Positions 15,771 to 53,442 of a DNA stretch of 64,000 bases are shown one piece after another. The translations under genes and the position numbers were made by a program. A model generated the notes under the pieces. The model was given only the letters and a program-made list of their open reading frames with translations, was not told the DNA's origin and did not search any database. The DNA lies in the NCBI RefSeq assembly GCF_000150275.1, contig NW_002060944.1:1660911-1724910 (forward strand). Reading direction: 5' to 3'. How positions within the stretch are numbered: the first letter of the stretch is position 1; the number at the start of each line of letters is the position of its first letter. Source of the DNA: Trichoplax adhaerens. Lineage: Eukaryota > Animalia > Placozoa.

Positions 15771-15912
15771 GATTATATTTCTTAATTAATTAATTAATTA
15801 TTATACTGTATAATTACTAATTATAGTCACTGCTCCAGTCTGCTGTAGTCTATCCTTTTAGTTCTTGGTGATTAGCGATACCGATTAACGCATTTTTCTC
15901 AAAGGTTCTGTC

Positions 15913-19188: not shown

Positions 19189-19239
19189 GCGGTCCGTACT
19201 AATTCAACCAGTCAGTTACTCAACTTACTCATATTGTAA

Positions 19240-19487
19240 AGTACAGTACTACAGTATTAAAATACGAACAATACAGTACAGTACAATAAAAAGTCACGCT
19301 GAGGTCACATTTTCGGCAACCTAGCAACCTTTTTAGCAACTAGTTCAAATCCATAGTACTGTACTGTACTGTACCGTACATGTACTGTATATCAATCAAG
19401 TAATCGTATAAAAATTACAGTACTGTACAGTACAATACAGGAAAGCCCATCGAGAAAATACTGTACTGTACCAACTTGTACTGTAGT
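19240..19487. repeat. TACAG/CTGTA array upstream of E3
   Basis: Dense tacagtacagtac / tactgtactgtactgtac runs ending about 160 bp before the E3 ATG. Confidence 0.8.
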
Positions 19488-19643
19488 GCACTCATTGCTA
19501 TTGCCACTGAATACTGATAAAGTGCACACTAAAAAAGTTACGCAATTACTTTACGCACTAGCTGCACTCCAACTCAGAGGTTCCGCTGCAAACATCGATT
19601 CTAAAAATTTGATTAACGACAGAATATTTACGTTTGAGAAACT

Positions 19644-22025: not shown

Positions 22026-23714
22026 CTTATGAACTATACCTTGGACTATTAGAGATTTAGTTCTAAAAGTAGTTTAAGTAAACATAAAATTCTGGGTATT
22101 CACCATCATCCTCGTACAAGGTTAATTCTTACAAGATGTCTAGGTTCGCGTGTGGATTCCCTACATTTTTAACTAGTCCATGGCTCGCGCCGTGATGATC
22201 ATTACTTATACTGAATAATTACTGCAACTGCGAAGAAAGCTAGAAGTAACTATGCATTTTACCATATAGAAGTGTAATGCAAAATTTTGCAACATTATAG
22301 CAAATACATAAAGCTATCATGCATTTTGGATTGATATTATGTTACCGAAGTAAAATGTAATAAAAGTATGCAGCAGTTTGCACATGCTACATTGGCTCAG
22401 TAGAATACTTTGATTTATGTTTTGAGATATATGACACCATCAACTGTTCCTATTCTGCTTATCACCACTCTTTGTCTTTAAACGATGTTGATATAATGAC
22501 TATCGACAATAATTAATATAAAGGTATTCAAGGTTTTAAAATGTCTTACTGCTTTATGCAACATTTTCAAGATTTCGATTCTTGATTACTATTTTATAGG
22601 GTTATGTCAGCAGCTGCAGCTTTAATCCTTTAGCCCGCTAAGCTTCAGGATTCTCACAATAGCGGATTTTACTGACGCTTAGCTTTTATTGTAAAGGTTA
22701 AAATTCTATAAGAAGAACCATAGTAAAGCATTTGACCGGTGATTTGCTAAAATCATAAAGCCGTTAGCTCAAATGGTCTCTAATTACATACAAGAGTTAG
22801 TCTAGCGACCTTCTGTTCATTACACGTTAAATCTAACGGTCTTAATAAATGCGTGCAATGCATGACCATCGCGATTGATAAGTAACTAATCATACTACTA
22901 TGCGCGTACATTACAATATTGCACCAGTACATGTTATATGTTATACTGTGCTAGCATGCTGATACAAATCGATACCTTTTACAATTCTAGTCGAAGCACC
23001 ACTTGTGTGATTGCATATTTTATAATAAGGAGATCAGGATAAAACTAAAGTTAAAGTTATATGAATTTAAACTTTGATAAAAAACCAAATCTCTTCATAG
23101 AGATCCACATTAGGTCGTGCCACTTCTCATAGTTGAAAATCAAACCCTGAGCGCGTGTCAAATATCAATAAAATGAAAAACTAATAATGTACGTAGTTAA
23201 GTTGATGTTTAATAGATATATAAGATAACAAAGGCGATTGATATTCAAGGATCTAAAGATAGAGAGCATTCTGTGAAATACCTTAAAATTAATCTCATTT
23301 TGCCTAATGTAATTCTACTCCAGATAGCTCATTCATCGGTTAAACTAAGGATCACCAGATACTTTGTATAAAGTATTTAGCAGCCCATAATTAATACTCA
23401 AATTGAAACCTTCATCTCAAACTAGATTGCGGCATATTAATTGGATTTATTGAGTTTGTGTACGGTATTTAACAGTCAATTGATATTACAAATTTGAGCA
23501 AATATCAGGATTATCAGTCGAATCATTATACTTGAGTAAATTATTAAAAATGTACTAGTTGCTCGAATTTAGGTAATAGAGCATTGCTGACTAATAATAC
23601 CCTTTCGGACAGTAGCCTAACACTCATGTAACATATAGATTTAGTTATAATTTTATAGAGGATACAATAAGTACAATACTAGTAACTTATTCTTGTACTA
23701 TCTATAAAACACTA

Positions 23715-24762
23715 TTAATCTTCAGAATTTATGATATCACGTTGGTAATTTTGACTTGCTTTAAGGGCTCCTAAACCTTCAAGTAGAAATGAAGCACATA
23801 TGTAATTTCCCATAATGCGGTAACAGCGAAAGAAAGAGTCGCAACATTTTAGTCCATCACTGCAATCAGCATTGCTTTCATGACAAGTAATCTGTGAATA
23901 GAAAATCACAAATGTTCAAAGTTAATTAAATCAGGTGCAAAAAATGTTTATCGGCAGAGATTTAAAAATAGATACTGTATTTTATTATAATGGTAATATC
24001 GGTAATACGCGAAGGCAAAATCATATCATTCACCGTTTTACGTAATTATATTCAGCATCTAAAGCATCACCGCTGTTATTTTTGCGCAAAATATCTAAGC
24101 TATCCAATAATATTATCTTGCTATTTATTTCAAATTCTGAAACCCCTTATATGTTTAATATGTTACCTAACAACCTTCATTATGTCGACTAATTTTATTA
24201 TAACTTAATTATTAAGAGTAGGAACATAACAAAAATTCCTGAAGCGTAATGTATCCATAATACAGTTGATTTAAAAGAATAGTCAATGTAAATCTTTAGC
24301 GAAAGTGCTTTATTGATATTCAGTTTAATAAGAAACGATAGCGTAAGAAGAATAGACAATGCTTAAGATTAACATATCAGCGTGCTTCGGGAATTGATTC
24401 CAGGAGGACTCTCTTAGGTAAAATATATGTAAGTAATAAATGCTTACTATAGGACGACTGATAAAATATTTCTATGCAGTAAATTCCTTTTTTCATAGTA
24501 ATGCAAGCATGATAAATGGTAAACTTACGGTCTTATTATTTCCAGAATGATCAGCATCGTTAGCAAGAGTTGTTTCCTCCGTCTCCTCCTCTTTGTTGTT
24601 TGGGGCGCCCTGCGATTGTTCTTTGACTGGCTGATCTTCTCGTTGCCGAAATGGATTGAATGAAAACCTAATATCACTTATGTCAATAATTCTTCGACAT
24701 TGGATTTGAATCATACTGGCAAATATTAAAGTAAATATTAAAATTTTCGTATCGACCTTCAT
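23715..24762 (-). CDS. Small secreted precursor with inhibitor-cystine-knot-like (C-C-CC-C-C) domain
   Basis: Exons 24762-24529 and 23891-23715 join in phase 0 (NNKT|ITCH). Hydrophobic signal MKVDTKILIFTLIFASMIQIQC, acidic spacer KEEETEETT, then CHESNADCSDGLKCCDSFFRCYRIMGNYIC and a 26-aa extension. Confidence 0.75.
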
Positions 24763-25737
24763 CTTTTCTCGTAACTCCTGAAAACATAGTTAGAGCCAAT
24801 ATTTAGTATGTCACAGTATACTAGATTGCATTGCCCATATATAATCATTTAACATCAGCGGCCTTGATTATATATATTATCTTACGTATGTTATTTTTTA
24901 TATTCCTAAATTTGTAAGCTTCATATGTGATTACTTATAAAAATTCACTATAAATGCATTTTATGCTTATTTTATGTCCCAGTTGCAGTTATTAGCGAAG
25001 CCAAATTGTCCTCATTTTACCTTTACAATAGTTTATATGTCGATACACTGTAATACTGTATCTTTCTATCCCCATGATACTGAATTCTAAGGAAATAATC
25101 TCAATTTTTTAATTTTATGGGAATAGTAATAGTGGCAATGGACTTGCAATCTATTCGTACTTCGAATTAACCATCATACTTAGTAAATCATCACCCTCAG
25201 AAATGGCAAAAGTCTCTGAAGCGGCAAAATTTCTGTTACATCGAATGCACACTTTTGTTGCATACGCAAATGATTTCTTGTATTAGTTAAGTAAACTAAG
25301 ATATGTTCTATTGATTTATGACTATATGACTATAATAGCCTTTAATCTTCTTATTTAAAGGCTATAGACGATATATCCGTATATACGGATGCATTATAAA
25401 TGAAGGAGCAAATGGTATAAATTTATAAATACCACTCAGGGAAATTTAGGCGACAAGTGCTATTCTATTCTATCAGCTTAATGTCGCGGAAACAGCAAAT
25501 AGTTTTAATAATTATATCAACATAACTAAACCAACATAATATTATGCAATTAATTTATTCTATGTACTACGGTGTAATAGTAATTAGATTACATAAATTA
25601 ATATAATACCACGTAAGAAAGATAAAACAGTGAAATTATGTGGCACTAGCAAATAGTTACACGAAGAGTTACATAAATATTCTATTTCGAAAGATTCTCT
25701 ATCATAGCTTGTTATAAAAAAATGAAGTATTTCTTAC

Positions 25738-25850
25738 CCTAAAGCCTATGAATCAATACTGTTTCGTAAAATCGAACAGTTAAGAGGAGCCACAAAGGTT
25801 GTTGCTTTGTAAGTATTCATCAAAATTATCTGTTAAAGGGGTATATATAG
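25738..25850 (-). promoter_or_regulatory. Probable TATA box and non-coding first exon of the knottin-like gene
   Basis: Minus-strand CTATATATAC at 25841-25850, a donor GG|GTAAGAA near 25737, and an acceptor TTTTCAG near 24778 just before the ATG. Confidence 0.45.
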
Positions 25851-28800
25851 CTTCTTTTGCTAACCGTCTCAATGAAGAATTCTTAATAATAAAAGTAAAT
25901 GCTGCTACGACTAATACTAGCAAGGTAAAATTAATTAAATCCGGAAATAACACAGTTTCGACAGATTAAAATATTTACATAAGATGGCACCTGTCAAATT
26001 GAAATTACAATAATCATGATTAAGCAATTACATAAACGCGTAGGAGACATTGAGCAAATTTCTATGCTTTTATCATATTCTTTATCTCAGAATCTCGTAA
26101 AAGTTTCGAGGTAGTAAATATTTGCTATATGCTTAAATCGTACAGCACCCCTCTTAACCTAAAGAATCCAATAGTTGTTTTAGGACGTGAATGATTGCAT
26201 CGTTTGAAATATTTTATGACCAATAAAGGAGTATTCTAACTTTTTGTCAAGAAATTGCGTTGTTGAAAATGACAGAGAAAAATGAACATCTTATAATTTA
26301 CCTTAATAAAATATCAGCTACGTGATGGCGATATTCAAGACCTATTTTTAACTTTGTGGGTTTATTTATCATTGCTGAAGGCAGAAGCCGGACTCTGATT
26401 TATTAAATGCGGATAATTGTTGAGTAACATATGTGTAATATCTTTTTATATACATTGCGATGCGATCAATGTACGATTACGAAGATTTAAATTAAGAAGT
26501 TTACGTATGATGATGCATTATGGCATTTCGAATATTTGATGGTCTTTTTTGTTTCTTTATAATCTCATTGATTTAGTTGATTAAATTTTTAATTTTTAAC
26601 TAAAGATAAAACAAGAGCTTTTCCTTACATTTATATGAAATGGACCATCTGCTCCTTTGCCAAGTCAATCTGTTATAAAGCGTGCTTGATTCAAACAGAA
26701 CGCCAGAAATTGATATTGTGCTCTCGTTAATCCGTTTATTGAGTCAATATAAAATAACCTTCTACATGATGCCAAATATAGTTACCACTTAAAGTTATTC
26801 TCTAATCACACATAAGACCGTAAATATTTAATTAACACTATCATTCAAACTGATTCTTTCATAAGTTATTCAGTAATATACAGTATATCGTAAACTATAA
26901 TACTATTGGTGAAAATATTGGATACTGTATCGTATATTTAAATATGCGATACAGTATCCAATATTTTCAAGCAAGGTTACTGCTGTTGGAATAAATGCAT
27001 GTACTGTAGGTTGTAGAACAATAGCTTCATTTATTTGTAATGTACAACATTTACATATACGGTCTAAGCTGAATCGTACCAAAAAGGAAACTACTCTATA
27101 TTTCAATTTTATTCACTTTGAATTAACCATCCACACAGCTAAACAATTCACTCAACAAATTTGTAATGATATCGCAACTGTTCTTCTCAGATTCTTCCTT
27201 AGGAGTACGGCACATATAAACAACAAACGTACAGTACGGTTTTGAACCGCAGATGGAAGTTACTAATCACAGTTCCTAGGTGCTCTTAGTATGAATTGAC
27301 ATCGTAAGCACTTATTATCGTATCATTCACACTTATCCTAAGAGAAGTATGCTAAAAACTTGTTTCAATTCAATTACAGTAGTTACATGTTATCTGAACA
27401 GATTTTAATATTACAGGATCGAGTTAACACTTTTGAAACATAATTATAGAATATATTAATAATACGAGTATAAGTTTCGAAATACTAGTAAATTTAGTAT
27501 TTTAGTGTGCACTTGATATTAAGTCAATATTGAACAATACTGAGGTATATTTCGAATTAATTGCTGCAAATGAACAATTCGTATAAATTCTGATTTCATA
27601 TCGGTAGTCACTACCGCAGTAATCGTATCTTTTAGATAAACTTTCCTGCGGGTACGTCTTTTACTTGCCTACGATATGTTGTATGTCACATATTCTGCTA
27701 GATTATGACTACTCGTATCTGAACTTATCACAGCTGTGCTTCTCTATTTCTGATTAGTGCTATTTTAAGCTGCGTCGTATTTTATACTCAAAAATTAATT
27801 ACAGTAATTAATATCTTTAATTGCATAACAAGAAACCTATATCTGATTGTGACGAATACAATAGCAGGTTACTATTGTAGCAAAACGGTCATTCCACTAT
27901 TTCGAATTAATTATAATGATAAAATTTAATTTAATATAGTCTTTATCAATCATATATTATTTGATTGTTAAATGTCGTTCCTTTGAATTGAACTGATTCT
28001 CGCTTATACAATACCATAGCCAAAATCTATTTACAAGGAGTAAATAGTTGTAACGTTGTAACGATATATGTCTCTTAAAACAATACTGCATCCAAATTAT
28101 CATAAAATTCCTTGAATTAAGTCAGTTTCACGGACACACTTGAAATAATTACCACACTGTAATACTTGAGTACTAAATTCCTTTCGTAAATTTGTTTTCT
28201 GAATAGTATAATGCGCACTTTCTAATTTTTACCTCTTCCTTATAACATAGCATTTCAGAGTAATTTAATTTCGAGCCGGGTAAAAACAGCTGCTTTTAAG
28301 CTAGGATAGAAATCTAATTTAACGTGAGGCTGTAAGACACTGTATAGACATTTCTACTCAGACTACTGTACGAGTGTACGCAGCAGACAAACTGCGTTCA
28401 TTCAAGTGTATTCATCCACTTACGTCTTATTGATCTTATTTGTTTCACTACCGTATTTCGAGCTGAAGACAGAGTCTCACAACATCTTCCACAGAATTTC
28501 ATGGCTGATTGACAATGAAATAGAATTAATGAATGAATTATAAATATTATTTAACCGTGAACTACAGTCGGAGCTAGGTATAGTACAATAGCTTCGCTCT
28601 AACAAGAAACTGATTCATTTTTTTATTTTTGGTAAAATATTCTTTTTCAAATAGTACAGTACATATTCACTTTTCGTAATATATCTTGTAGTTTTAAAGA
28701 GTTGACACATGTGGCAATTCCACGGTTTTCTGTCATTATTGAAGCAGTCTTTAAAACTGGGGACTTCTTATCTTAACAAGACTTTGTCCATTCGTCTGAC

Positions 28801-29096
28801 TCTCCGATTCGTCCGTCTCTCCTTCCTTTCCCTACGGACAAAGTTTTATAAGTTTTAGTAAAGGTGTTATTATTATTTATCATGTACAGTTTATTAATGA
28901 CGGTGAGAAGTCGGAAGACAGTAAACATACAGTCATGGTACACATTCGATGTACACTGTATAGTGTACAGTATGAATAAAATGATGTCATCATTCGTCCA
29001 ATAACTAGTGCAGTGAAAGCTCATCTGCAGTACAACCTGTACATGAAAGTTAATGAGAGACACTAGAGGAATCCATTGGAAAAACTCTCGTTCAAC

Positions 29097-30787
29097 ATGA
29101 AGACTCGTGTACAATTCATCTTTTTGACCTTGTTGGTTTTCTTGGAGATATCAAGCGCATGTACACACCCTAAGCAACTACAGGGTATTTTAGCAGATGC
29201 AATAGCGACTAAAAAAATGCAACCAGGCGCCAAATTAGACTTACTAGAACTTGGAATCCGTTATTATTACGACTCTGTACTGCAGAAGATTCGTCTTGAC
29301 GAAAATATCGATGGAACCCGAATTACAGTTATTCAAGATTATAAACGGGTACAACATCCAAATACACGTATTTTGTGCAATAGCTGCTCGAAATTATAAC
29401 GTATACGTACGTATAATACGGATATACATTTGGCTCAATTTTCCGACGATTTCGTCAGAAAAGTGTTCGTGTGCCAAGCTGATTGGCTGGTAGTGAACGT
29501 CGTTCTTATCAATGTTGTCAATTTCTTTCTCACACTCTGTAAGAAATTTGTAAATCGGCGAGCGCTTAGGGAAGACAGGATCATTATAAATCAGTATGAG
29601 ACCGCATCGATTGATTAAATAGATCTTACGTGATTACAGTACTTAGGGAATCGTATTAATATTGATCGCTTTTATTTGACAATGCGCGTGCAATAGTAAC
29701 TGTTTCAAGTCGAGAAATCAGAAAAGTTACAGGTGCATCATGCAGTCTTATGAAAAAGTAAATCTATACCCGTATACCTGATTGATATTTTTTGATTTTA
29801 TCCTTATTACGAGATGTATTTCCCTTTCCCAGTTTGAGTGCTGATTGATCTCACCGTCAATCCAATCGAATTAACCTAATTATTAGTCTTTGGTACATAC
29901 CTGTAGTAATAAGTTAACGAATCTGTACCGTGTTCGTACACATTAATTGTAAGTATACTAGTCTTTTACTCCGTTGCGTTGCCGACGGATCGGACTCATA
30001 ACGTTAGCTTGGATCAAATCCAATAGATGGACTAACGATTTTTAAATTATGCATCATATACAAATGGGCTTTAATTGATAAGCAATTCAACTATTCTCTC
30101 CTTTAACTCTTGTTTTTAGCACAAGTCTTACACTATCATCAATGGTGATAAATGTACAAGCTCTAACTTAACACAACGCTTTCCAGATTACCCACCACGT
30201 AAGTATTTGGCTGTGTGAACATTTAGCATCATTCATTTTCTAATCTTATTCTATTGTGATCAGTACTAAATAACTTTACCAAGTGGGACTTAAAATTCTG
30301 GTTTAAGCATTTAAGCGTCATTTATTGGCTTAACTCATTGTTATATTATTTCAAAAATCTAGAAGATATAAAATCACTCGGAACTTTTGAATTTGGAGGA
30401 TCAAGGAATAAAATTCAAGTCGATGGCTATTCATTCATTTTTCAGGGCACATCTGTTCAACTTTTCTTTAACTCAAAGAATTGTATTCCAGTAGCTGAAA
30501 CTGCATATATTCAAATGCCGAATCAATTGTCTTTATCAGCTATTGCATTTTCCAATATGACCGCAAGTATCACAGATCCTTCCGTATTTAACCTACCTCC
30601 CGTATGTTCCGAATTCGCCACAACGACTCTTGAGGTTAGTAATAACAACAACAGAAGTGTATGTTAACCTTGATAAAAGCACTAGCTGTATGCCTCTAAA
30701 ATCGGTTTGCTCTTTTTTTTACAGAGGTTCGATCCTATCCACCATGCTAGGTTAAGATTTGCTGAAAGACATGTACGCTTACACTAA
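29097..30787 (+). CDS. Ependymin-related secreted protein E4 (4-Cys type)
   Basis: Exons 29097-29348, 30120-30198, 30363-30634, 30725-30787. Signal peptide; CTHPKQLQG, YYYDSVLQKIR, KCTSS, FGG, CIPVAE, ITDPSVFNLPPVC; His/Arg-rich tail RFDPIHHARLRFAERHVRLH. Confidence 0.88.
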
Positions 30788-33714
30788 CAGCTTGGATTAG
30801 AAGAAAACATATCCTAGATGTCCTGTATCCCATAATTCCGTTATACGCGACCAGTATTGATAAGAGAAAGGATTAGTCTATAGGCATTTCGTTATTCTAC
30901 ATTTTATGTTGTAATTAAGAAGTTACTTAATTAACTGTAAATTACATTAATAAATGAACTTCTATTCTTCTTGTTATCTCAAAATCGAATTTTTATTATT
31001 ACAAGACTCACTTCCTATTGATAAATCTAAAAAATCACTTTTCCAGTGTTAAATAAACGGTTTCCAAAAATTTGCTAGCAATCACCAACAGTTAGGTCGT
31101 ATTCACAATCTACTCCAGATTCATTGCTCCGTTCCTTCTATAGTAACAGGAGTATAAACGTGAAACTAGACAATCAGCTTGTAGCAGTTCTTTCTTGAAC
31201 TGTAAAGGCTGCTTGATAGGAAGGGAAGCTATTTTTATACTATTTGTTTACGAATTAAATATTGTCAACAAGGTTCTACGAGTCACATTGGTATAGATAG
31301 GTAGGAATATACTGTATCTTAAGTTTATATTAACAAAGTTCTTACTCTTATTTCGGGCTTTAACCAGCTATTATGCATAATACGCGGGATTCGGGCTTTA
31401 GCCGTAACATTAACCTTAAGATAATAATAACGTACAGCGAATGGACAGGATGTTAAGTCAGTGAGGTTATGAAGCAGAAATTAGTATTATTTATAGCAGT
31501 GTTTTGCATCTTACTTCTTATTCACTCCGAAATTCGAAACGAATTAGGCTCTCCCAATCGCAAAACACTGATTTGTAGCTTATAAAACGACATACGAGTA
31601 TGTAGAGAGCATAGCTGCACAATTAAAATAACGCATTCCTGTCTACTGTAAGTACTATACTGTATATCAAGTGATTGTAAAGCTGTAGCTAGGAACTATA
31701 GGTGCCGTAAATGACTACATACGACTATCTATATTTGAAATGTATAATACAAATCAAAGGTCTGAATTTAGAGACCTCCACGGTCTGATCCGGATCAATT
31801 AAATTTTTTGATAAAAAGATTTAGAACGATGATAAACGCGTACATTCCTCATTACGTGACGTGGACCACGATTTTACTCATACACTATTTACTACCATGC
31901 TTACTGCAATGCGATACATTAGTTTTAAGATATACAAGAAGACATGCACGATAGCACATTTTCCGACGCATTAGTTTGCCTTATTAACTCCTTTGTGGCA
32001 TTGAATCTGTCAGCTGTAGGGTTATATATTCTTGATGAGCAGGTAGCGTTTAATTGACAATTAAAGTTAGGAGACGATACATAGATAAGTTACCTTCGTG
32101 GTGATGAGATTAAGGACAAGCAGCGAGAGCAATGTAATCTACGTGTATGTGTATTCATACGTTACTCATTCACAGTCCAATCTTGAGAACTAATCTACTG
32201 TTGCAGTAAGTTTTGTATATCTACTGTATCGTTATTATTTGCAGGTTTACTAAACAGCATACAGTTGATGACTAGTACAGTCACAATATCAGAGATGCGA
32301 TAGGATATTCCGTTGGTACGCGTATGATGTAAGTGACAGAGAGCCAATATTTGGACTAATTAATGTAATTAGTTATCAGAACATTATGACTGTTCACGTA
32401 CTGTACCAACAAGTTCTCAGAGCTAGAGCAAGCCCATTACTTCATATGTCAGATAAACTACTATATGATACCGGGTACCGTACATCGCAAAAAAAACTCA
32501 GATACGGAGACTGTTGCTGGATTTATTTGCAGTCTGAACGTGGAATTCGCGTAGCTCGCATTTTTTGAGTTGAAAACTAGCACGAATTTAATGAAGCTAA
32601 CGAAAATTTACATACATATATACTGGCAATAAGATAATTAATAAGAAAAAAATCACTTTATATATATATTACGAAATCGAAATCTAGAGGTACCGAACTA
32701 ATAGCAATATAAACAATAATCACGAAAGTAAATTACATGCTTCATAGATTTATTAAATTAAGTATCTTTTTTACAATTCACCAACCCGTTAATATTATAT
32801 AACATATATATTACTGCCAGTGGCCGATTATGGATTTGGCCGTAACTTATATATAATCCAGACAATCGTAAGTCAGCACGACTAATTCAGCACATTGATA
32901 GATTCTCCTCGTTGTAGTCCTTTAATAATAACTTTTGCACTGTATGTTGCCAATCAAAGTTCTGCTAATATTAGGTATGCCATAACACGTAATACAATAT
33001 GGTACGTAATATTTATGTAAAACTCGTTAATATTCTACGACAATAATTTGAGCAATGCAACAAATTTAAATAAAGTACTTCAACGATAAAGTTTTAGATA
33101 TTTTTTGTCGCTGAAGAAATCCAACAACAGGTTTCTGAAACTGATCAATATTAAAATATTTCATCCTTATCGTATTCGCATATCTACAGATTTTACTACT
33201 TGTTTCGTAAGCGATTGCAAGAATCCTCTATAAGGCAGTTACTAGTTTTATGACTCCTAAAATCTAACATCTTCTATAGTAGTACTGTTATGATATCTTC
33301 CCGTATTGTTCTGGTCGAAACATTACGAACCGTAATTTACGGTCAATATGTAAATTTTATTAAACGTTACTATAATAAGAACTTTTCATTATTATTATGT
33401 AAATCAACTGCCACGGTGTTAATACAATACTATACCATCAATGTGAAACAGGTTGTCAAGTAAACGATAGACGTCAACCAGGATTTCAAAAAATCATGAT
33501 TAATGATTAATTACAATAATAAAGCGTTGTATTACTTACCTATTAATAACATTACTATACTACTTATAATATTCCTTTTTAACAATATTAGCATTATTTC
33601 CGGTCAGCTAATTGGGTTGACGGCAACTAGTTGCCAGCTTCATTGACAATTTTTGAAATAGGCAAAATATTGGAACTCGCGGAGAAGAAAAACTAGAGCA
33701 TCACCAATACAGTT

Positions 33715-35823
33715 ATGCGTTATATCCTTGTTTTGGCAACATTAATCACCATGGCTCTAGGCTGTTGCCTGCCAGAAAGATTTCTAGTTAACATTGATAC
33801 TTATAACCCACGCATTCGTAGTAATCTTAATCTTACAAGTCATTCAATGATATATGCTTATGATTCCATTAATAACAAGATAATGGTGAAGTATTCAGAG
33901 AGCAAGAAAATCATTTATGATTATCTAAATGTATGTTTTCTAATGACTAGCGATATGTAATGATTGTAAATTATGTAACAGTTACTCTAGTTTACTTAAT
34001 TCATCATAAATTCAACTGGGGTGCTTGGTAGTCCATTAGTGCAAGTATCTTATAGCTTTAAACTAAACCCATACTCATGGATCACTAATTACTCTGAAAA
34101 TTTAGTAATTCATATTCCTACGCACGTATTAAGCAGAATCGTATTAACATTACGCCACTACAGAGATCATAATAATTCCAGTCGATAACTTCTTATGTTA
34201 GTCATTCAAATCGACAGTATATCACTGTAATAAAATTTAAATCCAAAGAAAATATCAGTGGATATTAATAGCTTTTACTACAATTTATTGGAAGTCTATT
34301 GTTAACGAATTATTATATATACATCTGGCAAAACATCATCAGCCATCTTACAAGTTTCTATAGCTTCCTATTACATTTTTCATATACTTTAGTCGGCAAT
34401 ACTATTGCAATTATCATGATAGATATGATATCTCTACTAGTATAGGTCTCTATTAACTTCAATAACTATTTAAATCAGTTAATCTGCTAACGTTACAATC
34501 ACTAAGACTATTCAGGAATACTGCTTTAAAGTTTTGCTCTATTTTGGAAATAGGGTTTCCTGTATAATCAAGTCAATGCCACACACTGCATCAGTTCCAG
34601 GATATCCACCAGGAATTTACAGAAAATCTGCCTATCTATACGTAAGAGCAAGATAAAGTGTTTTCAACCTTAGAATTAGATTATCTACCAGAAATCTCCC
34701 TTACAGTAATGGATAATATACAATAGACAAGCTAATATTTTTTATTTTTTCGTATTTACTGCTCTTCAATATGAATATATACTGAACTCAACTTAAAAAT
34801 TTCCAATATGAGAAGCTTAGCCATTTTTCACACATCCATATTTCTCTCACCTTTTTTATATATCAAAAATAAATATATATATATTCAATATTCATAAGCT
34901 TCAGTGAGTGTGTACGAATAACATCTCAAATAGCAATTAGCACTGTCTAGTACCGTATCTTTTCATCTTCACTACTTTAAATAAGATGAAAAATTATAAC
35001 TGTATCTCAAAAATCTATTACAAAATAATATCAACTCAATTAGAAATAATCAACCGATAGAGGTGTAATTGCAACACATACTTCTACTTTGTAGTAAACA
35101 ATAGTGCGATGGGCCACTACAATCTCGGTGCCGGTAAACTGCCTTTCACGGCGTACGGAAAACGAACTGTTTCTGCCAATGTGGCCCGCGGATGGATATA
35201 TACAATATCGGAAGGCTGTTTGCCATTGACTACAACATCTTACTCAAATGATGTCAAACGCGGATACGCCTCTACAGCTGTATGGACTAACATGAAATTG
35301 CAATTTAATAGCTCTGTCTTATTCCGTCCATCTCAATCTTGTCAATCAACCGCAAGTTCTACGCGTCACATTAATGTAAGTCATTTATTTTATTATTGGC
35401 CACTAGTATATGCTGATATTTGCGATCTGTTAGCGAACTGCTTAAAGGGTTCGTTAATCTGTGAAATATTATACCGGCTTTTGGAGAAAATATAACAGCA
35501 TACAGTAGCTACTATCGATTATTCATTAATGTACAATTGTTTCCTAGGAATTTGATTTGATGAAAGACATTCACAGTAAATCTAGTCAACCGTTAGATGA
35601 GAAAAAAACTAAATTTATAAGTAGAATAAATAAATTCATGGATAAAGTTGAGATGGAACGTCAGCAAGAAAACCTTCGTTATCTAGAAGAAATGAAGCAG
35701 CGCCAGGAAAAGTATCGTATGCAGCAGGAACTAGAGACATACGAACGTTTAGCAGAATCAGAACTCAGGGAAGAAGACGGTAACTATGAAGATGATGATG
35801 ATGAGGATTTGAATTGGGAATAA
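33715..35823 (+). CDS. Ependymin-related secreted protein E5 (cationic core, long acidic tail)
   Basis: Exons 33715-33930, 34554-34641, 35095-35375, 35548-35823. Signal peptide; CCLPERF, YAYDSINNK, GHYNLGAGKLPF, CLPL, LFRPSQSC; tail ends EEDGNYEDDDDEDLNWE. Confidence 0.82.
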
Positions 35824-37796
35824 ATTATATCAACGAAAATCTTTCCAAGCTACCGCGTCCCATTTTGCAGCATCTATATAAAATTAATGGTCATATAATC
35901 TACTTATCGCTAGTTAAACCTTGTCTAACTGATCCTTTCATCGTTGACAAGAAAACTGAATGGTCTATATAGTGATGATATCTTACACTTATATTTAACG
36001 TATCACTGCACCTATCGTAATTAATCTAGCTTTCTAATTCATTTCCCTTGAGATTATTAATTTACTTAGTATGTTAGCTCTGTAACAATAAGTTGTTTAA
36101 CTCATGATCAACACTTGAGTTATTACAACAATTCGATAGTTTCCATTTAATAATGAATCATTCAATAAAAAAGCAAGGTAGTCAACTCTTATCTCAAAGG
36201 CTAAATTTTTCGAATAAATTTATCGTGGCATAACTCGCTCTACGTAAAACACTTGTATTTCAGACACTAAAATTTGGTCTGATCAAGGCCATGAAATAAT
36301 AACACCATAACATCAATCAAATGTACTGTTCAATGACTTTTTACAGCCATTCTAACTACACTATAAATGTAAGGATAAAGTATGTAAAGTTAGCAAAAGT
36401 CATCACCAAAATTTATTTATTTTAACAATCTTCGACTCATTCTCAACGATGTAATATTATAACACGAAACTTTCTTATAATTAACTGAGAATATAGTATT
36501 GAATACAGTTCATTCAATAAAGGACTTGATCGATCTGACAATGACTAGTAAGCAATCATGTAATACTTCAATTAATATACTATAATTAGCGACGTTAGGA
36601 GCCTTATTTGCGATTAAATTTTGTACTATAAATTTTATCGTGAAATATCTATACAACATCAACAGTATGTGAATTATTTCCATTCACTCAGAAGTGAATT
36701 AAAAATACAATAGGGCAAGAGCGTAAAGTATTTCAGAAAAGGAGTTCTTATTACCGCCTCATTCAGTCATTGAACGAATCTAAGGTTATGAACTAAATAA
36801 TTACACTAAAGGAATAAATTAATTGTTATAAATGAGTTTAGAATCTCCGAAGAAGGTTCACCCTTCATGATAATGATGTCTTTAAGGGGCATTTAATAAT
36901 AGCTTGGTAAGAAGGCGGCTCGATTTGAGTTTGTTATATTAAGAAGTCTCTTCAATTATCGTCTTATATTATTGTTTTTCACTATTATTATTTTGTTTAA
37001 TCTTAAATTGACGATACACGTCATAACTATACGAAAATAATAGCAGGCGGTATGTTGTACTGACTTCTTTCGTAAAGCTAGTTAGATAATGGAATCTTCG
37101 TTTCGTAAACAATTAATAGAATATCAGTGGTTTAGCTATACGCTCACGTTCGTATGAATAGTTATTATAATTGACAATCACAACCTAAAGGCCATAAATC
37201 AATTAACTTAATTACCCCGGTGAGATTAATCTTAAAACGTTTCGCATAACACTTTTTAAGATTTAAAATTAAATAGTTCAAATTACAGTAACTGCAGTTG
37301 CTAATTTTATCGCCGTTTAATTAAGAGATCAATATTATTAATTCTTCATTGGTTTACTATATATAATTTATATGCCAGTCTAAAGTAGGATAAACATGTA
37401 TCTACATGAGCAATGAATTAGCCGGCATTACTTTATTGCGTAAAAATTTGTAAGAGTGGAGTCAGTAGCTCATACCCACCCTACCTGACGGCTCAGTAAG
37501 GTGCTAAAGACAATATCCTTCTTGTCAGAAAGATCTTCTTTTAGGCAGTTGAGATAATAATAATTATGAGCTAAAAGACAAAGCATTGACAAGCATTAAG
37601 GCAATCTAAAGGTCATTGAATGTGCACAGCATTAGATAGCATAGAAATAAAATGGGAATTTGACAATAAGATGATAGAGAATAGTTTACGAGTTATTCAC
37701 AAGATTGCCTTAAGCGGTTTATACGTCTATGTTAATTATTCATATCGGCAACTAAGACTCCACCCCTATTATCTCTACGGTTTTTTGTCAATCTAG

Positions 37797-37806
37797 CTAT
37801 ATAAAT
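37797..37806 (+). promoter_or_regulatory. TATA box of E6
   Basis: CTATATAAAT about 120 bp upstream of the ATG at 37922. Confidence 0.45.
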
Positions 37807-37921
37807 AACCTAAGCGCCCTAAATTAAGGCAATCAAATATTTCGCTATATCTCACTCAACGATTTAGCAGTTTTGAGAATTACTCTTAAGTCTTGTTGTT
37901 GTTACTGTATCAAAATACGCC

Positions 37922-38982
37922 ATGATTCGCTATATTTTTGTCGTTGCCATTTTTATCTCTCTAGCTTCATGTTGCTGCTATCCAAACCAATTTCATGCTT
38001 ATGTTGGTTACATGTCTAATTATAAATATGGCAATACTGCACAACACACATCATCAGCAATGCAAATATGGTACGACCACTGCAATAATCGAGCCAGATA
38101 TGATTATCCCAAATATAAACTCTCTTACATCTACAACTATCAAATGGTTAGATAACGGATAGAACCTACAAAATCATAACCACTGATAATATTGTATAGT
38201 GTATTGATTCAAGAGGCGATTCATATTTTCTAGGGAGAATACGTTTATATGCAAAACGGTACTTGCCGTGCTTACACATTACGTGGTAATCTGACCAAAT
38301 TGTGTACTCCAAGTAAGACATATTGTATCACCATTGCCTGTAAAAGTTGAATTATTATAACATGTGCCGTACATTCAAGTAATAAACTGATATTGCTGAT
38401 TTTAGAGCATAACTATTAATCTATTATCTTTTTATAATGAACTTCCTAATAGAGGGGTCACATTTGATCAATTTGGGTACCTACAACTTTGGAGCCGGAA
38501 AATTGCCTTTCCATGTCTCTGGCTACTTTAGAAATTATAAAACTGGCAGTTATGGATCAATATATTCTTATTCTACAGATTGTGTACCTCTAGCAAGTGG
38601 TGGATACTCCAAAAATAAAAGAGGTTATTCAGTCTGGGGAAGTTCTTGGGTAAATATGACGATTGGAATAAGTAATCTAGGTGTTTTTGATAAACCGAAG
38701 AATTGCAAAGGATTTACCCGAGGAATAGTTAACCAGGTTCATATATTCTCGATATTTCAACGTTATAATATCTGTCAGTTTAATTATAAATGTTATTGTA
38801 TACAATAATTTAGCCTACATTACCAACTATTCAATTAATATTATCTTACATTATACAAAATTATTGCATGACAGGAATTGGACTTGATGGATGTCATCAA
38901 CAGATCTTTCAAAAAGGATGTTAGTACAGAAAAGGGCGAAAAATTCTCCAATATCATCGAAAATGTTTTCAGTAATATTTAG
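37922..38982 (+). CDS. Ependymin-related secreted protein E6 (cationic, Tyr/Gly/Ser-rich)
   Basis: Exons 37922-38146, 38234-38312, 38453-38736, 38875-38982. Signal peptide; CCCYPNQF, WYDHCNNRAR, CTP, GTYNFGAGKLPF, CVPL, IGISNLGVFDKPKNC; tail ELDLMDVINRSFKK... Confidence 0.87.
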
Positions 38983-41238
38983 ATGTGACTATATATGTCT
39001 CTATTTGCCAGTCACTATGCGTATTATTCGATAAACGTTATGAAATTTTATAACTTTATCAGTTAATAGCATATGTTAAAAGCAGCGAGTATCTTTAGTA
39101 TTGATTCATCTACATAAATTTTTGGGCTAGATAGTAGATTTTAGGCCTGATTTCTCCTAATTAATAATCGTCTATTTCGTAACTTGCGCATTGAAATTCA
39201 TCTGCTGACTGTTATAACTACCACAGCATTTCAATATTTAAAATGTATCGTACATCCATGACATTCGCTAAATAAAAATTCTGTCGTTGTCAACTTGTTT
39301 AGCATTGATGATGTTGCGTTCAATCTCGCTATAAATCGTTTTAGCGAAAAAGTAAATCGTAAACTTCTCTAATTTATGAGAATTTTCAAATTAATTCAAT
39401 TCTAGATTACCTATTTACTTTATCACATCACAAAGTCATGCTGAAATAGTGCACGAGATGGACTAGTAGGACTAGTATGAAGATCTACAATCGATAGCTA
39501 CTCGGAAGTTCAATGCGAATATAAGACTTCATTTATTGGGTTATAAAATAAAGTAATACTTGTACAAAGATAAAGTAAAATCAGACTAAACCTTACATAG
39601 TTTAAGAATATAATTTATTTAAAGCTGCGCTCAAATAGTGAATTTTCATATTAATTTACTTCGTAATAACCTTATTTCTCTTATAGTCTAATCATGTATT
39701 AAATATTTCATTAAAATATCAATTTAGAATTTCATACTTTTTCGAATTCACAAATAATTATTGTATTATTATATGTACTGTCTTTATCCCAGTCATATCT
39801 ACACATCCTGAACGCAAAGTAATTAAATGAAGGAAGTAATCAGTCCCACCGGACATTGGATACCAAAAAATCAATAGACTAAGTGAATTGAAAGAAAGCT
39901 ATTATTTTATGTCTTTGTTTTGTGCTTGCCAACAGGTTTGCGTTAACAACTATATTTGCATAATGTCTATTCATTTATTTAATCTCGCATAGAAAAATAC
40001 TATCTCTACAATCTTAAATGAAGCTAGAATGAGTTTTCAGCTTAACGTTCCTACATTTCATCCATTACTAGTTGACAACTATTTTATTTTTTAGCGAAAA
40101 TGGCATAAAAATTGTGCTGTACACTACTACTCTACATTATAACTAAATTAATTTAGCTGACGTCAATCATTCTATGATATAATATCTGAATTCAATGTCT
40201 ACTATTAACAAAATATAACATCGATGTGCAAGTATAAATAAAAGTAGGGAAAAAGAAGCGTAAAATTCGTTATTGAATAGACTTCATACATCAATCAATA
40301 ACATGAGTATCCGTTATATTCCAGACTTGAAAAAGACTAGTTGAAAATTCACAGCTATTAATATGAATGACTACTCGACGAAATCAATTATTATTATTTC
40401 GTGAGTAATATTAACTATCATTCTGTGAACGTGATATTGTGTATTGTGATCTCATAGTTACTTCCTCTTGGCTACAAAATAAATTCTTTTATTATCCTAT
40501 TTCATTAATTATAATTATGACTTATAAAGCATCCACAATAGTTTTTATTTCAATTAATTTAATGGAAATAGAATATATTTTGCTAGTACAATTTTAGGTA
40601 GCAATTTCTGTTGATATGGAGAACATGACGTTCTATATTATATCTCTTTCTGTTTAAAACACTCTCTAGGAAGAATATCAATTGATTATCCATAAAATAG
40701 TGTAAGAGAATTCAGACAATTTGGAAATACAAACGAGCTTTTAGTCTCCACATAGTTAATATTTTATTACTAAGAGATAAATGTTTTTAAGATTTATTAA
40801 TAACTGTCATTTATTAATTGATGTCAATCAAGGCACTTTGACGGTAATCATCTGATTCTCCTCGGAGCAATAAATCATCACACACAATAACTTATTGTGG
40901 CGGTAGCGTACATTAAATTTTTCTGAATTCATTATCTTTAAGATCAGCTAATGCACTACTATTAAAAGCAAGCAATATCTATTCATGTCTAAATCATTTA
41001 AATAGTTCATTAAAAGTTATAATGCGTCAGTATTTTTTACATAAATGACGTATTAGCACAATTGATAGTGGTAACAGTAATTGTTAGTTAACGTACTAAA
41101 TGGTGCATTTAATACACCCAAGTCAATTATGATCATCCTTCAACAACCTGTAGTGAACAATAGATGATCTATTGCCAAGTAACGCCTTTACTAAACCCCG
41201 TCAACGTTGATGGTGAATAATAGAATCAATTTAAAAGA

Positions 41239-41246
41239 TATAAAAG
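41239..41246 (+). promoter_or_regulatory. TATA box of E7
   Basis: TATAAAAG about 100 bp upstream of the ATG at 41342. Confidence 0.5.
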
Positions 41247-41341
41247 CCTGATTTTCTAGAGACGAGCAGATTTTTCTTAATCGTTGTGTAATTTTGCTAT
41301 AGAACGTGATTTAACGTTAGAGATTTCTGGAAATCGCAAAC

Positions 41342-42690
41342 ATGATGATGCGTCAATTGCTTACTTTAACCGCACTTTTTGCTTTATCGTCGGCTTGTTG
41401 CCTTCCTAGGCAATACTCAGTTTTGCTTGCTAGTGGTACTTTTAATAAATATTCCTCATCGATATCGCAATACGGCGCAATTAATAAGGTTTATTATGAC
41501 CAGTGCAATCAAAGAATTCGATACAATAATCCAACAGCGGGATTTTCGTTTATCACTGATTATGGAAGCGTAAGTTTTAAAAACAGGAAATATGTTGTAT
41601 CTTCATAAAATTTCATACGATCTATTCCATATTAGAGTTGATAGAAACCAATTACGAATCGATTTAATTATTAAAAAAGAGATACAGTATCAATAAACTT
41701 CAGTTATACACAATAATAGACTATGTGGCCATTAAGATCTAAATTTCTGATTCATATTACTGATGGTAGAACGAATATCATTCTATCCGTAATGGCACAT
41801 GCACTACATTTAAATTAAGAGGCAGTCTGAAAAGGACTTGTACACCAAGTAAGTATTAAAGATATCCTTATAAAATTATTCTGTAATTTATATGATAAAG
41901 AATTGTATAGTATCATCCTTATAATATACTGGTTCTGTACATTCTTACGTAAGTAAGCCAATTTTAATATTAAATGAAGTAAAACCATTCTCAATTAATG
42001 CTACTTCGCTAGGCTCTTTTCACTACATGAAAACACTGAATTTTGGTGCCGGTGCCCTTCCTTTTGATATTTTATCTTACAAGAGATTTGGTTCTACATA
42101 TAGTTCTGGTGCTTCCTATTTCATATCGAATCCTGGTTGTATTCCTATTTCCTATTCTGGCTTTTACAAGAGCAAAACCCGTAGTTCACTCCACGGCGTA
42201 GTTTGGCTAAATTTCACTATTGGCATCTCTGATTTGAGCGTCTTCAACGCTCCTAAATTTTGTAGAAGTACAAGAACTTTAAAATCAATGGAGGTAATGG
42301 ATATTTTATTTTAATATATCTGTAAGCATTAATAAAATGATTCGTACCAATTCTACTGTACTATTTCAGGTAGTCATATAGCTATGCAGCAATTTAATAT
42401 TATTTGTAAATTGCTAGTTCCGATTAAGTATTAAGTATTAATATGATATTTGCTATATTATTCAGAACTTCGATATATGGGATTTCATTGCAAAAGATTT
42501 TGGCCAAGAAACTAAAAATCCAGAAGAAATGTTTAACACCATGCACAAAGAAACTGAACAGGAAGAACGCAAGCCTGAAAATAAAGTAGAAATCAAACCA
42601 GAACGGAACGATGACTTTGATGGTAAGAAATTCCTTCGCGAAAATTTTGGTTTGGGAGACTTCGATTTTGAGGATAGCGACGACGAATGA
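41342..42690 (+). CDS. Ependymin-related secreted protein E7 (cationic core, acidic tail)
   Basis: Exons 41342-41569, 41770-41848, 42013-42293, 42466-42690. Signal peptide; CCLPRQY, YYDQCNQRIR, CTP, NFGAGALPF, CIPI, IGISDLSVFNAPKFC; tail ends GDFDFEDSDDE. Confidence 0.88.
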
Positions 42691-52452: not shown

Positions 52453-53442
52453 ATGGCCTATATCTTTTTAGCTATTGTAGGGGGCTTTGGTGCTACTTTA
52501 TGTCTTGCTATAGCGATTTTCACACTAAGTAGGCGTAAGTTACGATCACCAAATTTTGCATCCTTTTTAAGTTTGTGTATTAACGGTATATTCTTTGGAA
52601 GCTTGTATTTAATACCAAGATATGCCTCAGATTTTTCCCGTAATACTGCTATAATTTGCCACATACTACCACGGCTAGGTCAAGCACTTTTGCTTAATGT
52701 TGGTCTTCATGTTTCTATTATGACAATTGAACGGTACATCGCTATCGTTTACCCGTTTAGATACGAACGACTTTTTACTCGTACAGTAGTCGTAATTGTT
52801 ATTTTCTTTTTATGGTTTCTTGTTGTTGGTTTACAACTAATTGTTAGTGGAATTGAATATGCTCAAATCAATCAGACTATCGTCGACAAGTGTGCCTACA
52901 GTAGAGGATTCGGGAATACTAGCAACCTCATAAATGCTGGTTTTACCGTTGCACTAAGCTGTTTGACATTTATCGTTTTAGTTTACGTTTATGCACGTGT
53001 ATTAATCATAATATCACATCACCATCGGAAGATTCGTCGACATCTTACTCCATCAGACGCCGATAGTAATGTAGTTAGAACTCGTAAAAAGGCAATTTTA
53101 CAAGCTGGTCTACTATTCGGAGTCTATCTGGTCTTTTTTTTGCCCTTTATTCTCGTTACCGTTCTTTTGCCAAGCTTGCCATTCAGTATGTCACTATTTG
53201 ATTTTTATGTACATGTTCTACGAAATATGGCATTTGTTTTTCCGTTCATTCAACCTTTGCTGTATTTAATATTTACAGCAAATATTCGTAAAGAATTAAA
53301 GCATGTTTTATGTAGCAGTAGCCTGAAAAGCGCAATTCTTGTTAGTAACTCTAATACCGCCTTCGTTACTATTGAAAAAACTAGCATTAACCAATATGCG
53401 ACAAGGTCTGGTCTTCTCCAGAGTACTCAAACTCAAATATAA
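52453..53442 (+). CDS. Intronless rhodopsin-family (class A) orphan GPCR
   Basis: 329-aa ORF with seven hydrophobic segments, RKLRSP in ICL1, TIERYIAIVYPFRY (E/DRY), TM5 VYVYARV, TM6 FFLPF, TM7 QPLLY followed by helix 8. Confidence 0.92.
   Translation: MAYIFLAIVGGFGATLCLAIAIFTLSRRKLRSPNFASFLSLCINGIFFGSLYLIPRYASDFSRNTAIICHILPRLGQALLLNVGLHVSIMTIERYIAIVYPFRYERLFTRTVVVIVIFFLWFLVVGLQLIVSGIEYAQINQTIVDKCAYSRGFGNTSNLINAGFTVALSCLTFIVLVYVYARVLIIISHHHRKIRRHLTPSDADSNVVRTRKKAILQAGLLFGVYLVFFLPFILVTVLLPSLPFSMSLFDFYVHVLRNMAFVFPFIQPLLYLIFTANIRKELKHVLCSSSLKSAILVSNSNTAFVTIEKTSINQYATRSGLLQSTQTQI

What the first reader, a model, noticed from the sequence alone, without database searches (positions are those of the whole stretch)
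33715..42690. Cationic EPDR cores paired with charge-cancelling acidic tails behind a shared T-R-x-(I/L) motif
Hand counts (K+R minus D+E, mature region): E5 core about +12, tail about -12; E7 core about +14, tail about -13; E6 core about +14, short tail about -2 (exception). All three carry T-R-x-(I/L) between the last Cys and the tail (STRHIN, FTRGIV, STRTLK), which fits the SKI-1/S1P R-x-hydrophobic-x cleavage consensus. Known: thionins and class II plant defensins use an acidic C-terminal propeptide to mask a cationic membrane-active domain. Inference: E5-E7 may be pro-forms of membrane-binding or antimicrobial/lytic proteins activated by tail removal, a role I do not know for ependymins.
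Basis: partly seen in the sequence, partly recalled or inferred. Interest (0 to 1): 0.85.

Follow-up and report, generated by a model that had tools for sequence, protein, structure and literature searches.

The report
Placozoan ependymin genes with acidic tails
Three neighbouring, expressed Trichoplax genes encode secreted, strongly basic ependymin-type lipid-binding proteins, and two carry a C-terminal acidic tail that cancels the core's charge almost exactly; whether that tail is cut off to activate the protein is untested and has no support here.

Summary
The window is Trichoplax adhaerens. E5, E6 and E7 are four-exon ependymin-related (EPDR, LolA-fold) genes. T-R-x-(I/L) lies between the last Cys and the tail exon in all three.

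RNA contigs from four studies confirm every E5 and E6 splice junction, including core-to-tail. E7 matches public protein TRIADDRAFT_63614 ("expressed protein").

The interpretation, an acidic propeptide removed at an S1P-type site to release a lytic core, gains no support.
- The motif sits at the last element of the EPDR fold. It is part of an older segment also seen in E3 (ATRTEN) and E4 (ATTTLE), whose modelled tails are not acidic.
- It reads KRHN in a more distant E5-like orthologue fragment.
- Every tail begins with a family-wide amphipathic "FD" helix.
- E5's tail is mostly a 60-residue charged helix predicted with confidence.
- Relatives have very basic cores without acidic tails, and the reverse.

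In favour of charge compensation, core and tail charge are inversely ranked across nine Trichoplax paralogues (rho -0.95; four tail models lack RNA support).

My best reading is that the tail stays attached and sets the pI to 7.1-7.7, within the pH swing of the feeding groove. Cleavage is not excluded.

The parts
33715..33930 (+). E5 exon 1: signal peptide (MRYILVLATLITMALG) and N-terminal part of the EPDR core, starting at the CC pair
   Evidence: Model. Junction 33930->34554 is present in RNA contigs of four runs.
34554..34641 (+). E5 exon 2 (88 nt, two conserved Cys; ends in phase 1)
   Evidence: junction 34641->35095.
35095..35375 (+). E5 exon 3: C-terminal half of the EPDR core, ending ...CQSTASSTRHIN
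   Evidence: Weak Pfam Ependymin match (17.3 bits). AF2 fold match Z 14.0-14.6 through P0021.
35361..35372 (+). E5 T-R-H-I motif
   Evidence: It aligns with E6 TRGI in BLASTP.
35548..35823 (+). E5 exon 4: 91-aa tail, net -12, plus stop codon
   Evidence: Junction 35375->35548 in four runs; one 1535-nt contig spans the mRNA from exon 1 to the 3'UTR. Charges.
35548..35574 (+). E5 tail-initial amphipathic helix EFDLMKDIH (the family-wide 'FD' element)
   Evidence: hydrophobic moment 1.7; AF2 helix 199-207.
35599..35778 (+). E5 long charged helix (residues 213-272; 34 of its 60 residues are E, K, R or Q)
   Evidence: AF2 on P0021: one helix, pLDDT 76-97 over most of it. No significant heptad periodicity.
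35770..35820 (+). E5 acidic tip EEDGNYEDDDDEDLNWE; most of the tail's negative charge lies in the last ~30 residues
37922..38146 (+). E6 exon 1 (signal peptide and N-terminal core)
38234..38312 (+). E6 exon 2 (79 nt)
38453..38736 (+). E6 exon 3, ending ...CKGFTRGIVNQ (TRGI at 38716-38727)
   Evidence: Pfam Ependymin 41.6 bits on P0002.
38875..38982 (+). E6 exon 4: 35-aa tail, net -2. It is homologous to the first ~35 residues of the E5 tail and stops where E5's long helix begins.
   Evidence: The transcript continues as 3'UTR to about 39285 with no further joint.
41342..41569 (+). E7 exon 1 (signal peptide and N-terminal core)
   Evidence: Identical to P0001 = TRIADDRAFT_63614.
41770..41848 (+). 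E7 exon 2 (79 nt)
42013..42293 (+). E7 exon 3, ending ...CRSTRTLKSME (TRTL at 42270-42281)
   Evidence: Pfam Ependymin 81.3 bits. Predicted beta-strand at residues 187-193.
42466..42690 (+). E7 exon 4: 74-aa tail, net -13. It starts NFDIWDFIA and ends DFDFEDSDDE (42658-42687), followed by the stop codon.
   Evidence: (low pLDDT beyond residue 230).

Best explanation
E5, E6 and E7 are tandem duplicates encoding secreted ependymin-related proteins of Trichoplax adhaerens. Each has a LolA-type beta-sheet core with a hydrophobic ligand groove, as in human EPDR1, and the cores are unusually basic (pI 9.4-9.6). A separate fourth exon adds a short amphipathic helix (E/N-F/L-D-L/I-M/W-x-x-I) that other basal EPDRs also have. 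After that helix comes a lineage-specific extension: in E5 a 60-residue highly charged helix with an Asp/Glu tip, in E7 a less ordered acidic stretch, and in E6 nothing. I think the tail most likely stays on the secreted protein and tunes its electrostatics. It lowers the pI from about 9.6 to 7.1 (E5) and 7.7 (E7). The protein would then be near neutral or slightly negative in sea water (pH 8.1-8.5) and become positive (+3 at pH 6, about +10 at pH 5) when the feeding groove is acidified. That would favour binding of the basic lipid-binding core to anionic membranes, mucus or prey surfaces. E6, which lacks the acidic part, would be positive at all these pH values. Shown here: the gene structure, the transcripts, the fold, the charges and the tail anatomy. 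Inferred: secretion (from the signal-like N-terminus and the family), the pH switch, and any lipid or membrane target.
For: Organism and public models. Splicing of the tail onto the core in mRNA. EPDR/LolA fold: Pfam and AF2 with structural alignment, Z 13.5-14.6 to sponge EPD-BCP1 and human EPDR1. Charges and pI. Charge against pH. The feeding groove falls from pH 8.5 to a mean minimum of 6.0 (PMC12855814). Human EPDR1 (pI 5.27) binds anionic liposomes only at acidic pH, when it is net positive (PMC6363788). The start of the tail is conserved in intronless Trichoplax EPDRs (DFDYLKYF) and in other species' EPDRs. E5's tail is a confidently predicted long helix rather than a floppy propiece. 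Across nine Trichoplax paralogues, core and tail net charges are inversely ranked: (-7,+5), (0,+3), (+6,+3), (+7,0), (+10,0), (+11,0), (+12,-12), (+14,-2), (+14,-13); rho -0.95. The basic character of exon 3 is kept in more distant orthologue fragments. The Ependymin Pfam family is enriched in the ventral/pan-epithelial gene module of the four-species placozoan cell atlas. That result is for the family, not for these genes.
Against: Nothing here measures binding, pH dependence or the state of the protein in vivo. Asp and Glu stay charged at pH 6, so the calculated shift over the measured pH range is only about 5-6 charge units, much of it from His and from Cys that are probably in disulfides. 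The inverse ranking rests on related, non-independent paralogues, and the tail exons of E1-E4 are my own models without RNA support. It does not hold outside Trichoplax: rho is -0.31 (p 0.27) once other species' EPDRs are added. E6 is the exception. The E5 and E7 tails cannot be aligned beyond their first residues, so the match in charge could be a coincidence of two low-complexity tails. The cell type expressing these three genes is unknown.
Confidence: 0.4

Rival explanations
1. The acidic tail is a C-terminal propeptide that masks a cationic, membrane-active EPDR core. An S1P/SKI-1-like protease cuts it off after T-R-x-(I/L)-x and releases an antimicrobial or algal-lytic protein.
For: Core and tail charges cancel almost exactly in E5 and E7. 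The motif lies exactly at the boundary between the fold and the tail. It is kept in the E6-like and E7-like fragments of a more distant placozoan. E7's RTLK resembles known S1P sites (my knowledge). Net-positive EPDR1 binds anionic membranes. A placozoan secreted lysozyme is matured by limited proteolysis.
Against: The motif segment predates the acidic tails (E3 ATRTEN and E4 ATTTLE, with neutral or basic modelled tails), and its hydrophobic column is family-wide. The E5-like orthologue reads KRHN. E6 would have Val at P1 and has no acidic mask, yet carries the most basic whole protein. Other EPDRs have cores of +16 to +21 with non-acidic long tails. E5's tail is a long, confidently predicted helix. 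No lytic activity is known for any EPDR. Whether Trichoplax has S1P was not tested.
Confidence: 0.13
2. There is no functional coupling. Exon 4 is a modular, fast-evolving extension on a conserved helix, and two paralogues happen to have acidic, low-complexity ends whose size matches the core charge by chance or through weak selection on solubility.
For: The E5 and E7 tails cannot be aligned. E6 lacks the acidic part. Tails in relatives vary from 9 to 91 residues and from -13 to +5. No tail homologue turned up in the protein search, and the tails match no Pfam family.
Against: Cancellation is within one or two charges in both E5 and E7. Core and tail charge are inversely ranked over nine paralogues.
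Confidence: 0.3
3. The acidic tips bind cations or act in packaging. They would bind Ca2+ or basic partners (for example E6, or the cores of neighbouring molecules) and so condense the proteins in secretory granules, or bind mineral.
For: Asp/Glu clusters with aromatic residues lie at the extreme C-termini (EDDDDEDLNWE, DFDFEDSDDE). A block arrangement of one basic and one acidic part is what self-associating secretory proteins often show (my knowledge).
Against: There is no direct evidence of any kind. The core-tail docking test gave no verdict.
Confidence: 0.1

Closest known systems
Vertebrate EPDR1 / MERP1 (PDB 6E7O, 6E8N, 6JLD, 6JL9)
   Same: Same fold (Z 13.5-14.1), the Pfam Ependymin domain in E6 and E7, an N-terminal signal-like peptide and a conserved Cys framework. 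Binding of EPDR1 to anionic liposomes depends on the protein being net positive.
   Different: EPDR1 is acidic (pI 5.27) and ends a few residues after the fold. E5-E7 have cores of pI 9.4-9.6 and tails of 35-91 residues encoded by a separate exon. Sequence identity is under 20%.
Basal-1 clade invertebrate EPDRs, including the 13 Trichoplax genes counted by Wei et al. 2019 (PMC6363788), and sponge EPD-BCP1 (8I34)
   Same: E5-E7 belong to this expansion. The best structural match is 8I34_B (Z 14.3-14.6). The 'FD' helix after the last Cys is shared with other members.
   Different: The library searched holds no description of charge-balanced acidic tails, or of an inverse relation between core and tail charge.
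Acidic propeptides of cationic membrane-active proteins: thionins, class II plant defensins, eosinophil proMBP (from my knowledge)
   Same: A basic domain is joined to an acidic extension of about equal and opposite charge, giving a near-neutral precursor.
   Different: Those cores are small Cys-rich peptides or a lectin-type domain with shown toxicity, and their cleavage is demonstrated. Here the core is a 180-residue lipid-binding fold, and neither cleavage nor toxicity is shown.
Uncleaved acidic tails that regulate a basic domain within one molecule, such as HMGB1 (from my knowledge)
   Same: A C-terminal Asp/Glu run on a basic protein could modulate binding to polyanions without being removed.
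   Different: HMGB1 is an intracellular DNA-binding protein. No contact between tail and core is shown here.
S1P/SKI-1 substrates (consensus R-x-hydrophobic-x, from my knowledge)
   Same: RHIN, RGIV and RTLK fit the letter of the consensus. RTLK resembles known sites.
   Different: The consensus is loose: R-x-[ILVMF] arises in such a stretch in 6-13% of shuffles. Conservation is imperfect, and neither the enzyme nor the cleavage was tested.

Membership tests
Ependymin-related proteins (Pfam PF00811; LolA-like fold) | Match to the Pfam Ependymin model above its gathering score (32.3 bits) | tested here: met
   E7 scores 81.3 bits and E6 41.6 bits. E5 does not reach the cut-off (exon 3 alone 17.3 bits; no hit for P0021). 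E5 is nevertheless homologous to E6 (BLASTP E 2e-23) and to E7 (4e-11).
Ependymin-related proteins (Pfam PF00811; LolA-like fold) | LolA-type curved beta-sheet fold | tested here: met
   AF2 models of E7 (core pLDDT 77-93) and of E5 via P0021 align to 8I34_B, 6E7O and 6JLD at Z 13.5-14.6 over 155-168 residues. The input alignments contained EPDRs.
Ependymin-related proteins (Pfam PF00811; LolA-like fold) | Secreted: N-terminal signal peptide and conserved Cys pattern | tested here: inconclusive
   A hydrophobic N-terminus of 16-18 residues precedes the CC pair, and six to eight Cys are present. No signal-peptide predictor was available.
Acidic-propeptide precursors of cationic membrane-active proteins (thionin, class II defensin, proMBP type) | Acidic extension with charge about equal and opposite to a cationic domain | tested here: met
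   E5 +12/-12 and E7 +14/-13. E6 does not meet it (+14/-2).
Acidic-propeptide precursors of cationic membrane-active proteins (thionin, class II defensin, proMBP type) | Proteolytic removal of the extension in vivo | not testable with these tools
   No proteomic data on these proteins were found.
Acidic-propeptide precursors of cationic membrane-active proteins (thionin, class II defensin, proMBP type) | Membrane-permeabilising or antimicrobial activity of the mature domain | not testable with these tools
   The only published analogy is that human EPDR1 binds anionic liposomes when net positive.
S1P/SKI-1 substrates | R-x-hydrophobic-x motif at an accessible domain boundary, conserved in orthologues | tested here: inconclusive
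   The motif is present at the end of the fold in all three. It is kept as TRAL and TRGI but reads KRHN in the E5-like fragment. The segment is older than the acidic tails.
S1P/SKI-1 substrates | Presence of the protease and cleavage at the site | not tested
   The genome was not searched for S1P, and no cleavage data exist.

The most novel reading that the evidence does not exclude
E5 and E7 are charge-neutralised pro-forms of cationic LolA-fold lipid binders. In the acidified feeding groove, loss of the acidic tail (or its neutralisation) lets the basic core bind prey membranes and extract or disrupt their lipids. That would give ependymins a role in external digestion or defence. The inverse relation between core and tail charge across the whole array would then reflect a general exon-4 'counter-ion' module.
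Probability: 0.12. Interest if true: 0.7.

Novelty: new variant of a known kind. Interest (0 to 1): 0.4.

Why it matters
Ependymin-related proteins are widespread in animals and their function is still poorly understood. Placozoans digest prey externally with few cell types, and the molecule that lyses algae is not known. A set of paralogues with the same fold but different core and tail charges is a natural series for testing how charge controls membrane or ligand binding by an EPDR. If the tail proves to be a removable or pH-sensitive mask, this would be the first regulatory mechanism described for the family. If not, the locus is simply a diversifying secreted-protein array.

Tried and rejected
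- **Orthologue loci:** The loci behind the more distant orthologue fragments P0004, P0005 and P0007 could not be fetched, so their tail exons remain unseen.
- **Homology searches that came back blank:** a search with the E5 tail exon, a search with E7 that found only itself, and a profile of 13 EPDRs that found nothing new.
- **Metagenome scan:** a scan with the exon-3 profile found no relative.
- **Core-tail docking:** Complex prediction on E7 residues 19-196 against 197-270 gave no verdict. I do not count it either way.
- **Cathepsin propeptide idea:** structural rows in the protein atlas hinted that the tail might resemble the I29 propeptide of EPDR-cathepsin fusions. Pfam found no I29 or any other family in the tails, so I dropped this.
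- **Coiled coil in the E5 tail:** heptad periodicity was not significant (z 0.7), so I describe it only as a long charged helix.
- **Literature:** no paper in the library names these genes. No supplement of the placozoan secretory-cell paper or the lysozyme proteomics paper lists them. The cell-atlas supplement gives only a family-level enrichment.
- **Joined models:** the joined E5 model of this window was not sent to any search tool. Full-length searches and folds used the public proteins P0001, P0002 and P0021. Exons were joined only inside scripts, to count charges.


Full report
**What the window is.** The assembly has 105.6 Mb in 1414 contigs. The E7 protein is identical to TRIADDRAFT_63614 of Trichoplax adhaerens. 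The window carries a seven-gene array of ependymin-related (EPDR) genes. E5, E6 and E7 are the last three.

Each of the three genes has four coding exons with GT-AG introns in phases 0/1/0. Exon 1 holds a signal-like peptide and the N-terminal core. Exon 2 is 79-88 nt with two Cys. Exon 3 is 281-284 nt and ends a few residues after the last Cys. Exon 4 is the tail. Net charge (K+R-D-E) of mature core and tail is:

| Gene | Core | Tail | Core pI | Whole-protein pI |
|---|---|---|---|---|
| E5 | +12 | -12 | 9.6 | 7.1 |
| E6 | +14 | -2 | 9.4 | 9.2 |
| E7 | +14 | -13 | 9.6 | 7.7 |

TRHI, TRGI and TRTL are present where stated. By shuffling, such a motif is expected in that short stretch only 0.1-0.6% of the time. 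The looser R-x-hydrophobic pattern is expected 6-13% of the time.

**Are the tails part of the mRNA?** Contigs of four runs from four studies were laid on 33700-39690. They carry all three junctions of E5 (33930->34554, 34641->35095, 35375->35548) and of E6 (38146->38234, 38312->38453, 38736->38875). One 1535-nt contig runs through E5 from exon 1 into the 3'UTR. E6 transcripts end near 39285 with no further joint, so the short E6 tail is genuine.

Its model equals the public protein named "expressed protein", and it equals the Trichoplax sp. H2 protein P0020 apart from one core residue (R to H). The public H1 model of E5 (P0003, 180 aa) lacks exons 1-2. The H2 protein P0021 (286 aa) equals my E5 model except for D198N. 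I used P0021 as the full-length stand-in for E5. The joined window model itself was sent to no search tool.

**What the core is.** E7 and E6 pass Pfam Ependymin (81.3 and 41.6 bits). E5 does not, but it is homologous to E6 (E 2e-23) and to E7 (4e-11). AF2 models of E7 and of P0021 give the curved beta-sheet of the LolA superfamily. Z is 14.3-14.6 to sponge EPD-BCP1 and 13.5-14.1 to human EPDR1. These alignments end at model residue 192-193. T-R-x-(I/L) therefore sits on the last structural element of the fold, at the boundary with the tail. In E7 it is a predicted strand (187-193). In E5 it is coil.

**What the tail is.**
- All three tails start with an amphipathic helix: EFDLMKDI, ELDLMDVI and NFDIWDFI (hydrophobic moment 1.7-1.9).
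- The same element follows the last Cys in the intronless Trichoplax EPDRs (DFDYLKYF). It also appears in EPDRs of other species, and in my models of E1, E2, E3 and E4 (MDVDLRAM, GFDFSNHL, MIDHLHYV, RFDPIHHA).
- After this helix the tails differ. E5 has one 60-residue helix (213-272, pLDDT up to 97). It contains 14 E, 7 K, 7 R and 6 Q, shows no significant heptad periodicity, and is followed by EEDGNYEDDDDEDLNWE.
- E7 has weaker helices and ends DFDFEDSDDE.
- E6 is homologous to the first ~35 residues of the E5 tail and stops where E5's long helix begins.
- The E5 and E7 tails cannot be aligned. They match no Pfam family and no protein in the searched database.
- In both E5 and E7, most of the negative charge lies in the last 30 residues.

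**Is T-R-x-(I/L) a processing site?** The stretches between the last Cys and the end of exon 3 across the array are:

| Gene | Segment |
|---|---|
| E1 | CTNAIKSSVQ |
| E2 | CSQHASMKLP |
| E3 | CSQHATRTEN |
| E4 | CSEFATTTLE |
| E5 | CQSTASSTRHIN |
| E6 | CKGFTRGIVNQ |
| E7 | CRSTRTLKSME |

The T-R and the hydrophobic residue are thus pieces of an older shared segment, found also in genes whose modelled tails are neutral or basic. The hydrophobic column is conserved in distant EPDRs and in human EPDR1.

Fragments from a more distant placozoan (55-79% identical) keep TRAL (E7-like) and TRGI (E6-like) but read KRHN in the E5-like copy. From my knowledge of S1P, RTLK is a good fit, RHIN is unusual, and Val at P1 (E6) is disfavoured. 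None of this excludes cleavage at the domain boundary, but it gives no positive support for it.

**Is charge cancellation a rule?** Outside Trichoplax it is not. Relatives show cores of +16 and +21 with long tails of +2 and +3, and a core of +1 with a tail of -9. The overall rho is -0.31 (p 0.27).

Inside the genome the picture is more interesting. The nine paralogues give (core, tail) of (-7,+5), (0,+3), (+6,+3), (+7,0), (+10,0), (+11,0), (+12,-12), (+14,-2) and (+14,-13). Rho is -0.95. Three caveats apply:
- The paralogues are related, so the points are not independent.
- Two of the points are near-identical copies.
- The tail exons of E1-E4 are my own models. They are supported only by conserved donor position, phase and the FD motif, not by RNA.

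**Context from the literature.**
- Wei et al. 2019 counted 13 EPDR genes in Trichoplax. They showed that human EPDR1 (pI 5.27) binds liposomes only when these carry anionic lipid and the pH is acidic, that is, when the protein is net positive.
- Berndt et al. 2026 measured pulses of acidification in the feeding groove, from pH 8.5 to a mean minimum of 6.0. They also showed that the secreted lysozyme PLys is matured by limited proteolysis by unknown proteases.
- In the four-species cell atlas the Ependymin domain is enriched in the ventral/pan-epithelial module. This is not specific to these genes.
- Calculated net charge of full-length E5 and E7 goes from about -2 to -3 at pH 8.1-8.5 to about +3 at pH 6 and about +10 at pH 5. 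The cores alone are +9 to +18 throughout. Free-Cys pKa values make the alkaline figures slightly too negative.

**Verdict.** The genes are known, annotated members of a known family. The new points are the anatomy of the tail exon and the charge relation. The propeptide-and-lysis reading cannot be decided here, and the details tested lean against the S1P part. I prefer an attached tail that tunes charge (confidence 0.4).

Noticed in passing
window 13252-31000 (E1 on the minus strand, 13252-14962; E2 15913-17505; E3 19644-22022; E4 29097-30787): The four upstream EPDR paralogues can each be modelled with a fourth exon in phase 0 that starts with an FD-type motif. E2 pairs an acidic core (-7) with a basic tail (GFDFSNHLRRKRRASFYKSLTSNQ, +5). 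E4 has a basic His/Arg-rich tail. Together with E5-E7 this gives an inverse ranking of core and tail charge. These tail exons have no RNA support here.
   Followed up: partly
L006 (G000:C1413:5318127-5321339) and L007-L009 (G000:C1303, three tandem copies): A second, intronless EPDR subfamily of about 258 aa. It has basic cores (+7 to +11) and a 45-residue neutral tail starting DFDYLKYF. An orthologue fragment, P0017, exists elsewhere.
   Followed up: partly
window 34226-34390 (E5 intron 1): RNA contigs from two runs match only about 50-150 nt here and continue into unrelated sequence on both sides. This looks like a short repeat that is transcribed from other loci.
   Followed up: no
window 38484 and 38610 (E6 exon 3): All four runs read T where the assembly has C. 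Both changes are synonymous (Tyr112, Ser154), so the sequenced cultures differ from the reference at these sites.
   Followed up: yes
window 39102-39162 (E6 3'UTR): One contig of run X7 joins opposite strands here. It may be an assembly artefact at an inverted repeat.
   Followed up: no
window 52453-53442 (+): A single-exon 329-aa rhodopsin-family GPCR (Pfam 7tm_1, 61.8 bits).
   Followed up: partly
window 10353-12596 (+), with a run of N at about 10800-11000: Exons of a BTB/BACK-domain gene (BTB 32.3 bits), interrupted by an assembly gap.
   Followed up: partly
window 24493-24762 (-): An 89-aa ORF with a signal-like N-terminus and an acidic Glu/Asp-rich middle, lying inside the EPDR array. 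It has no Pfam match. Another note of this scan (s1-805216) flags it.
   Followed up: no
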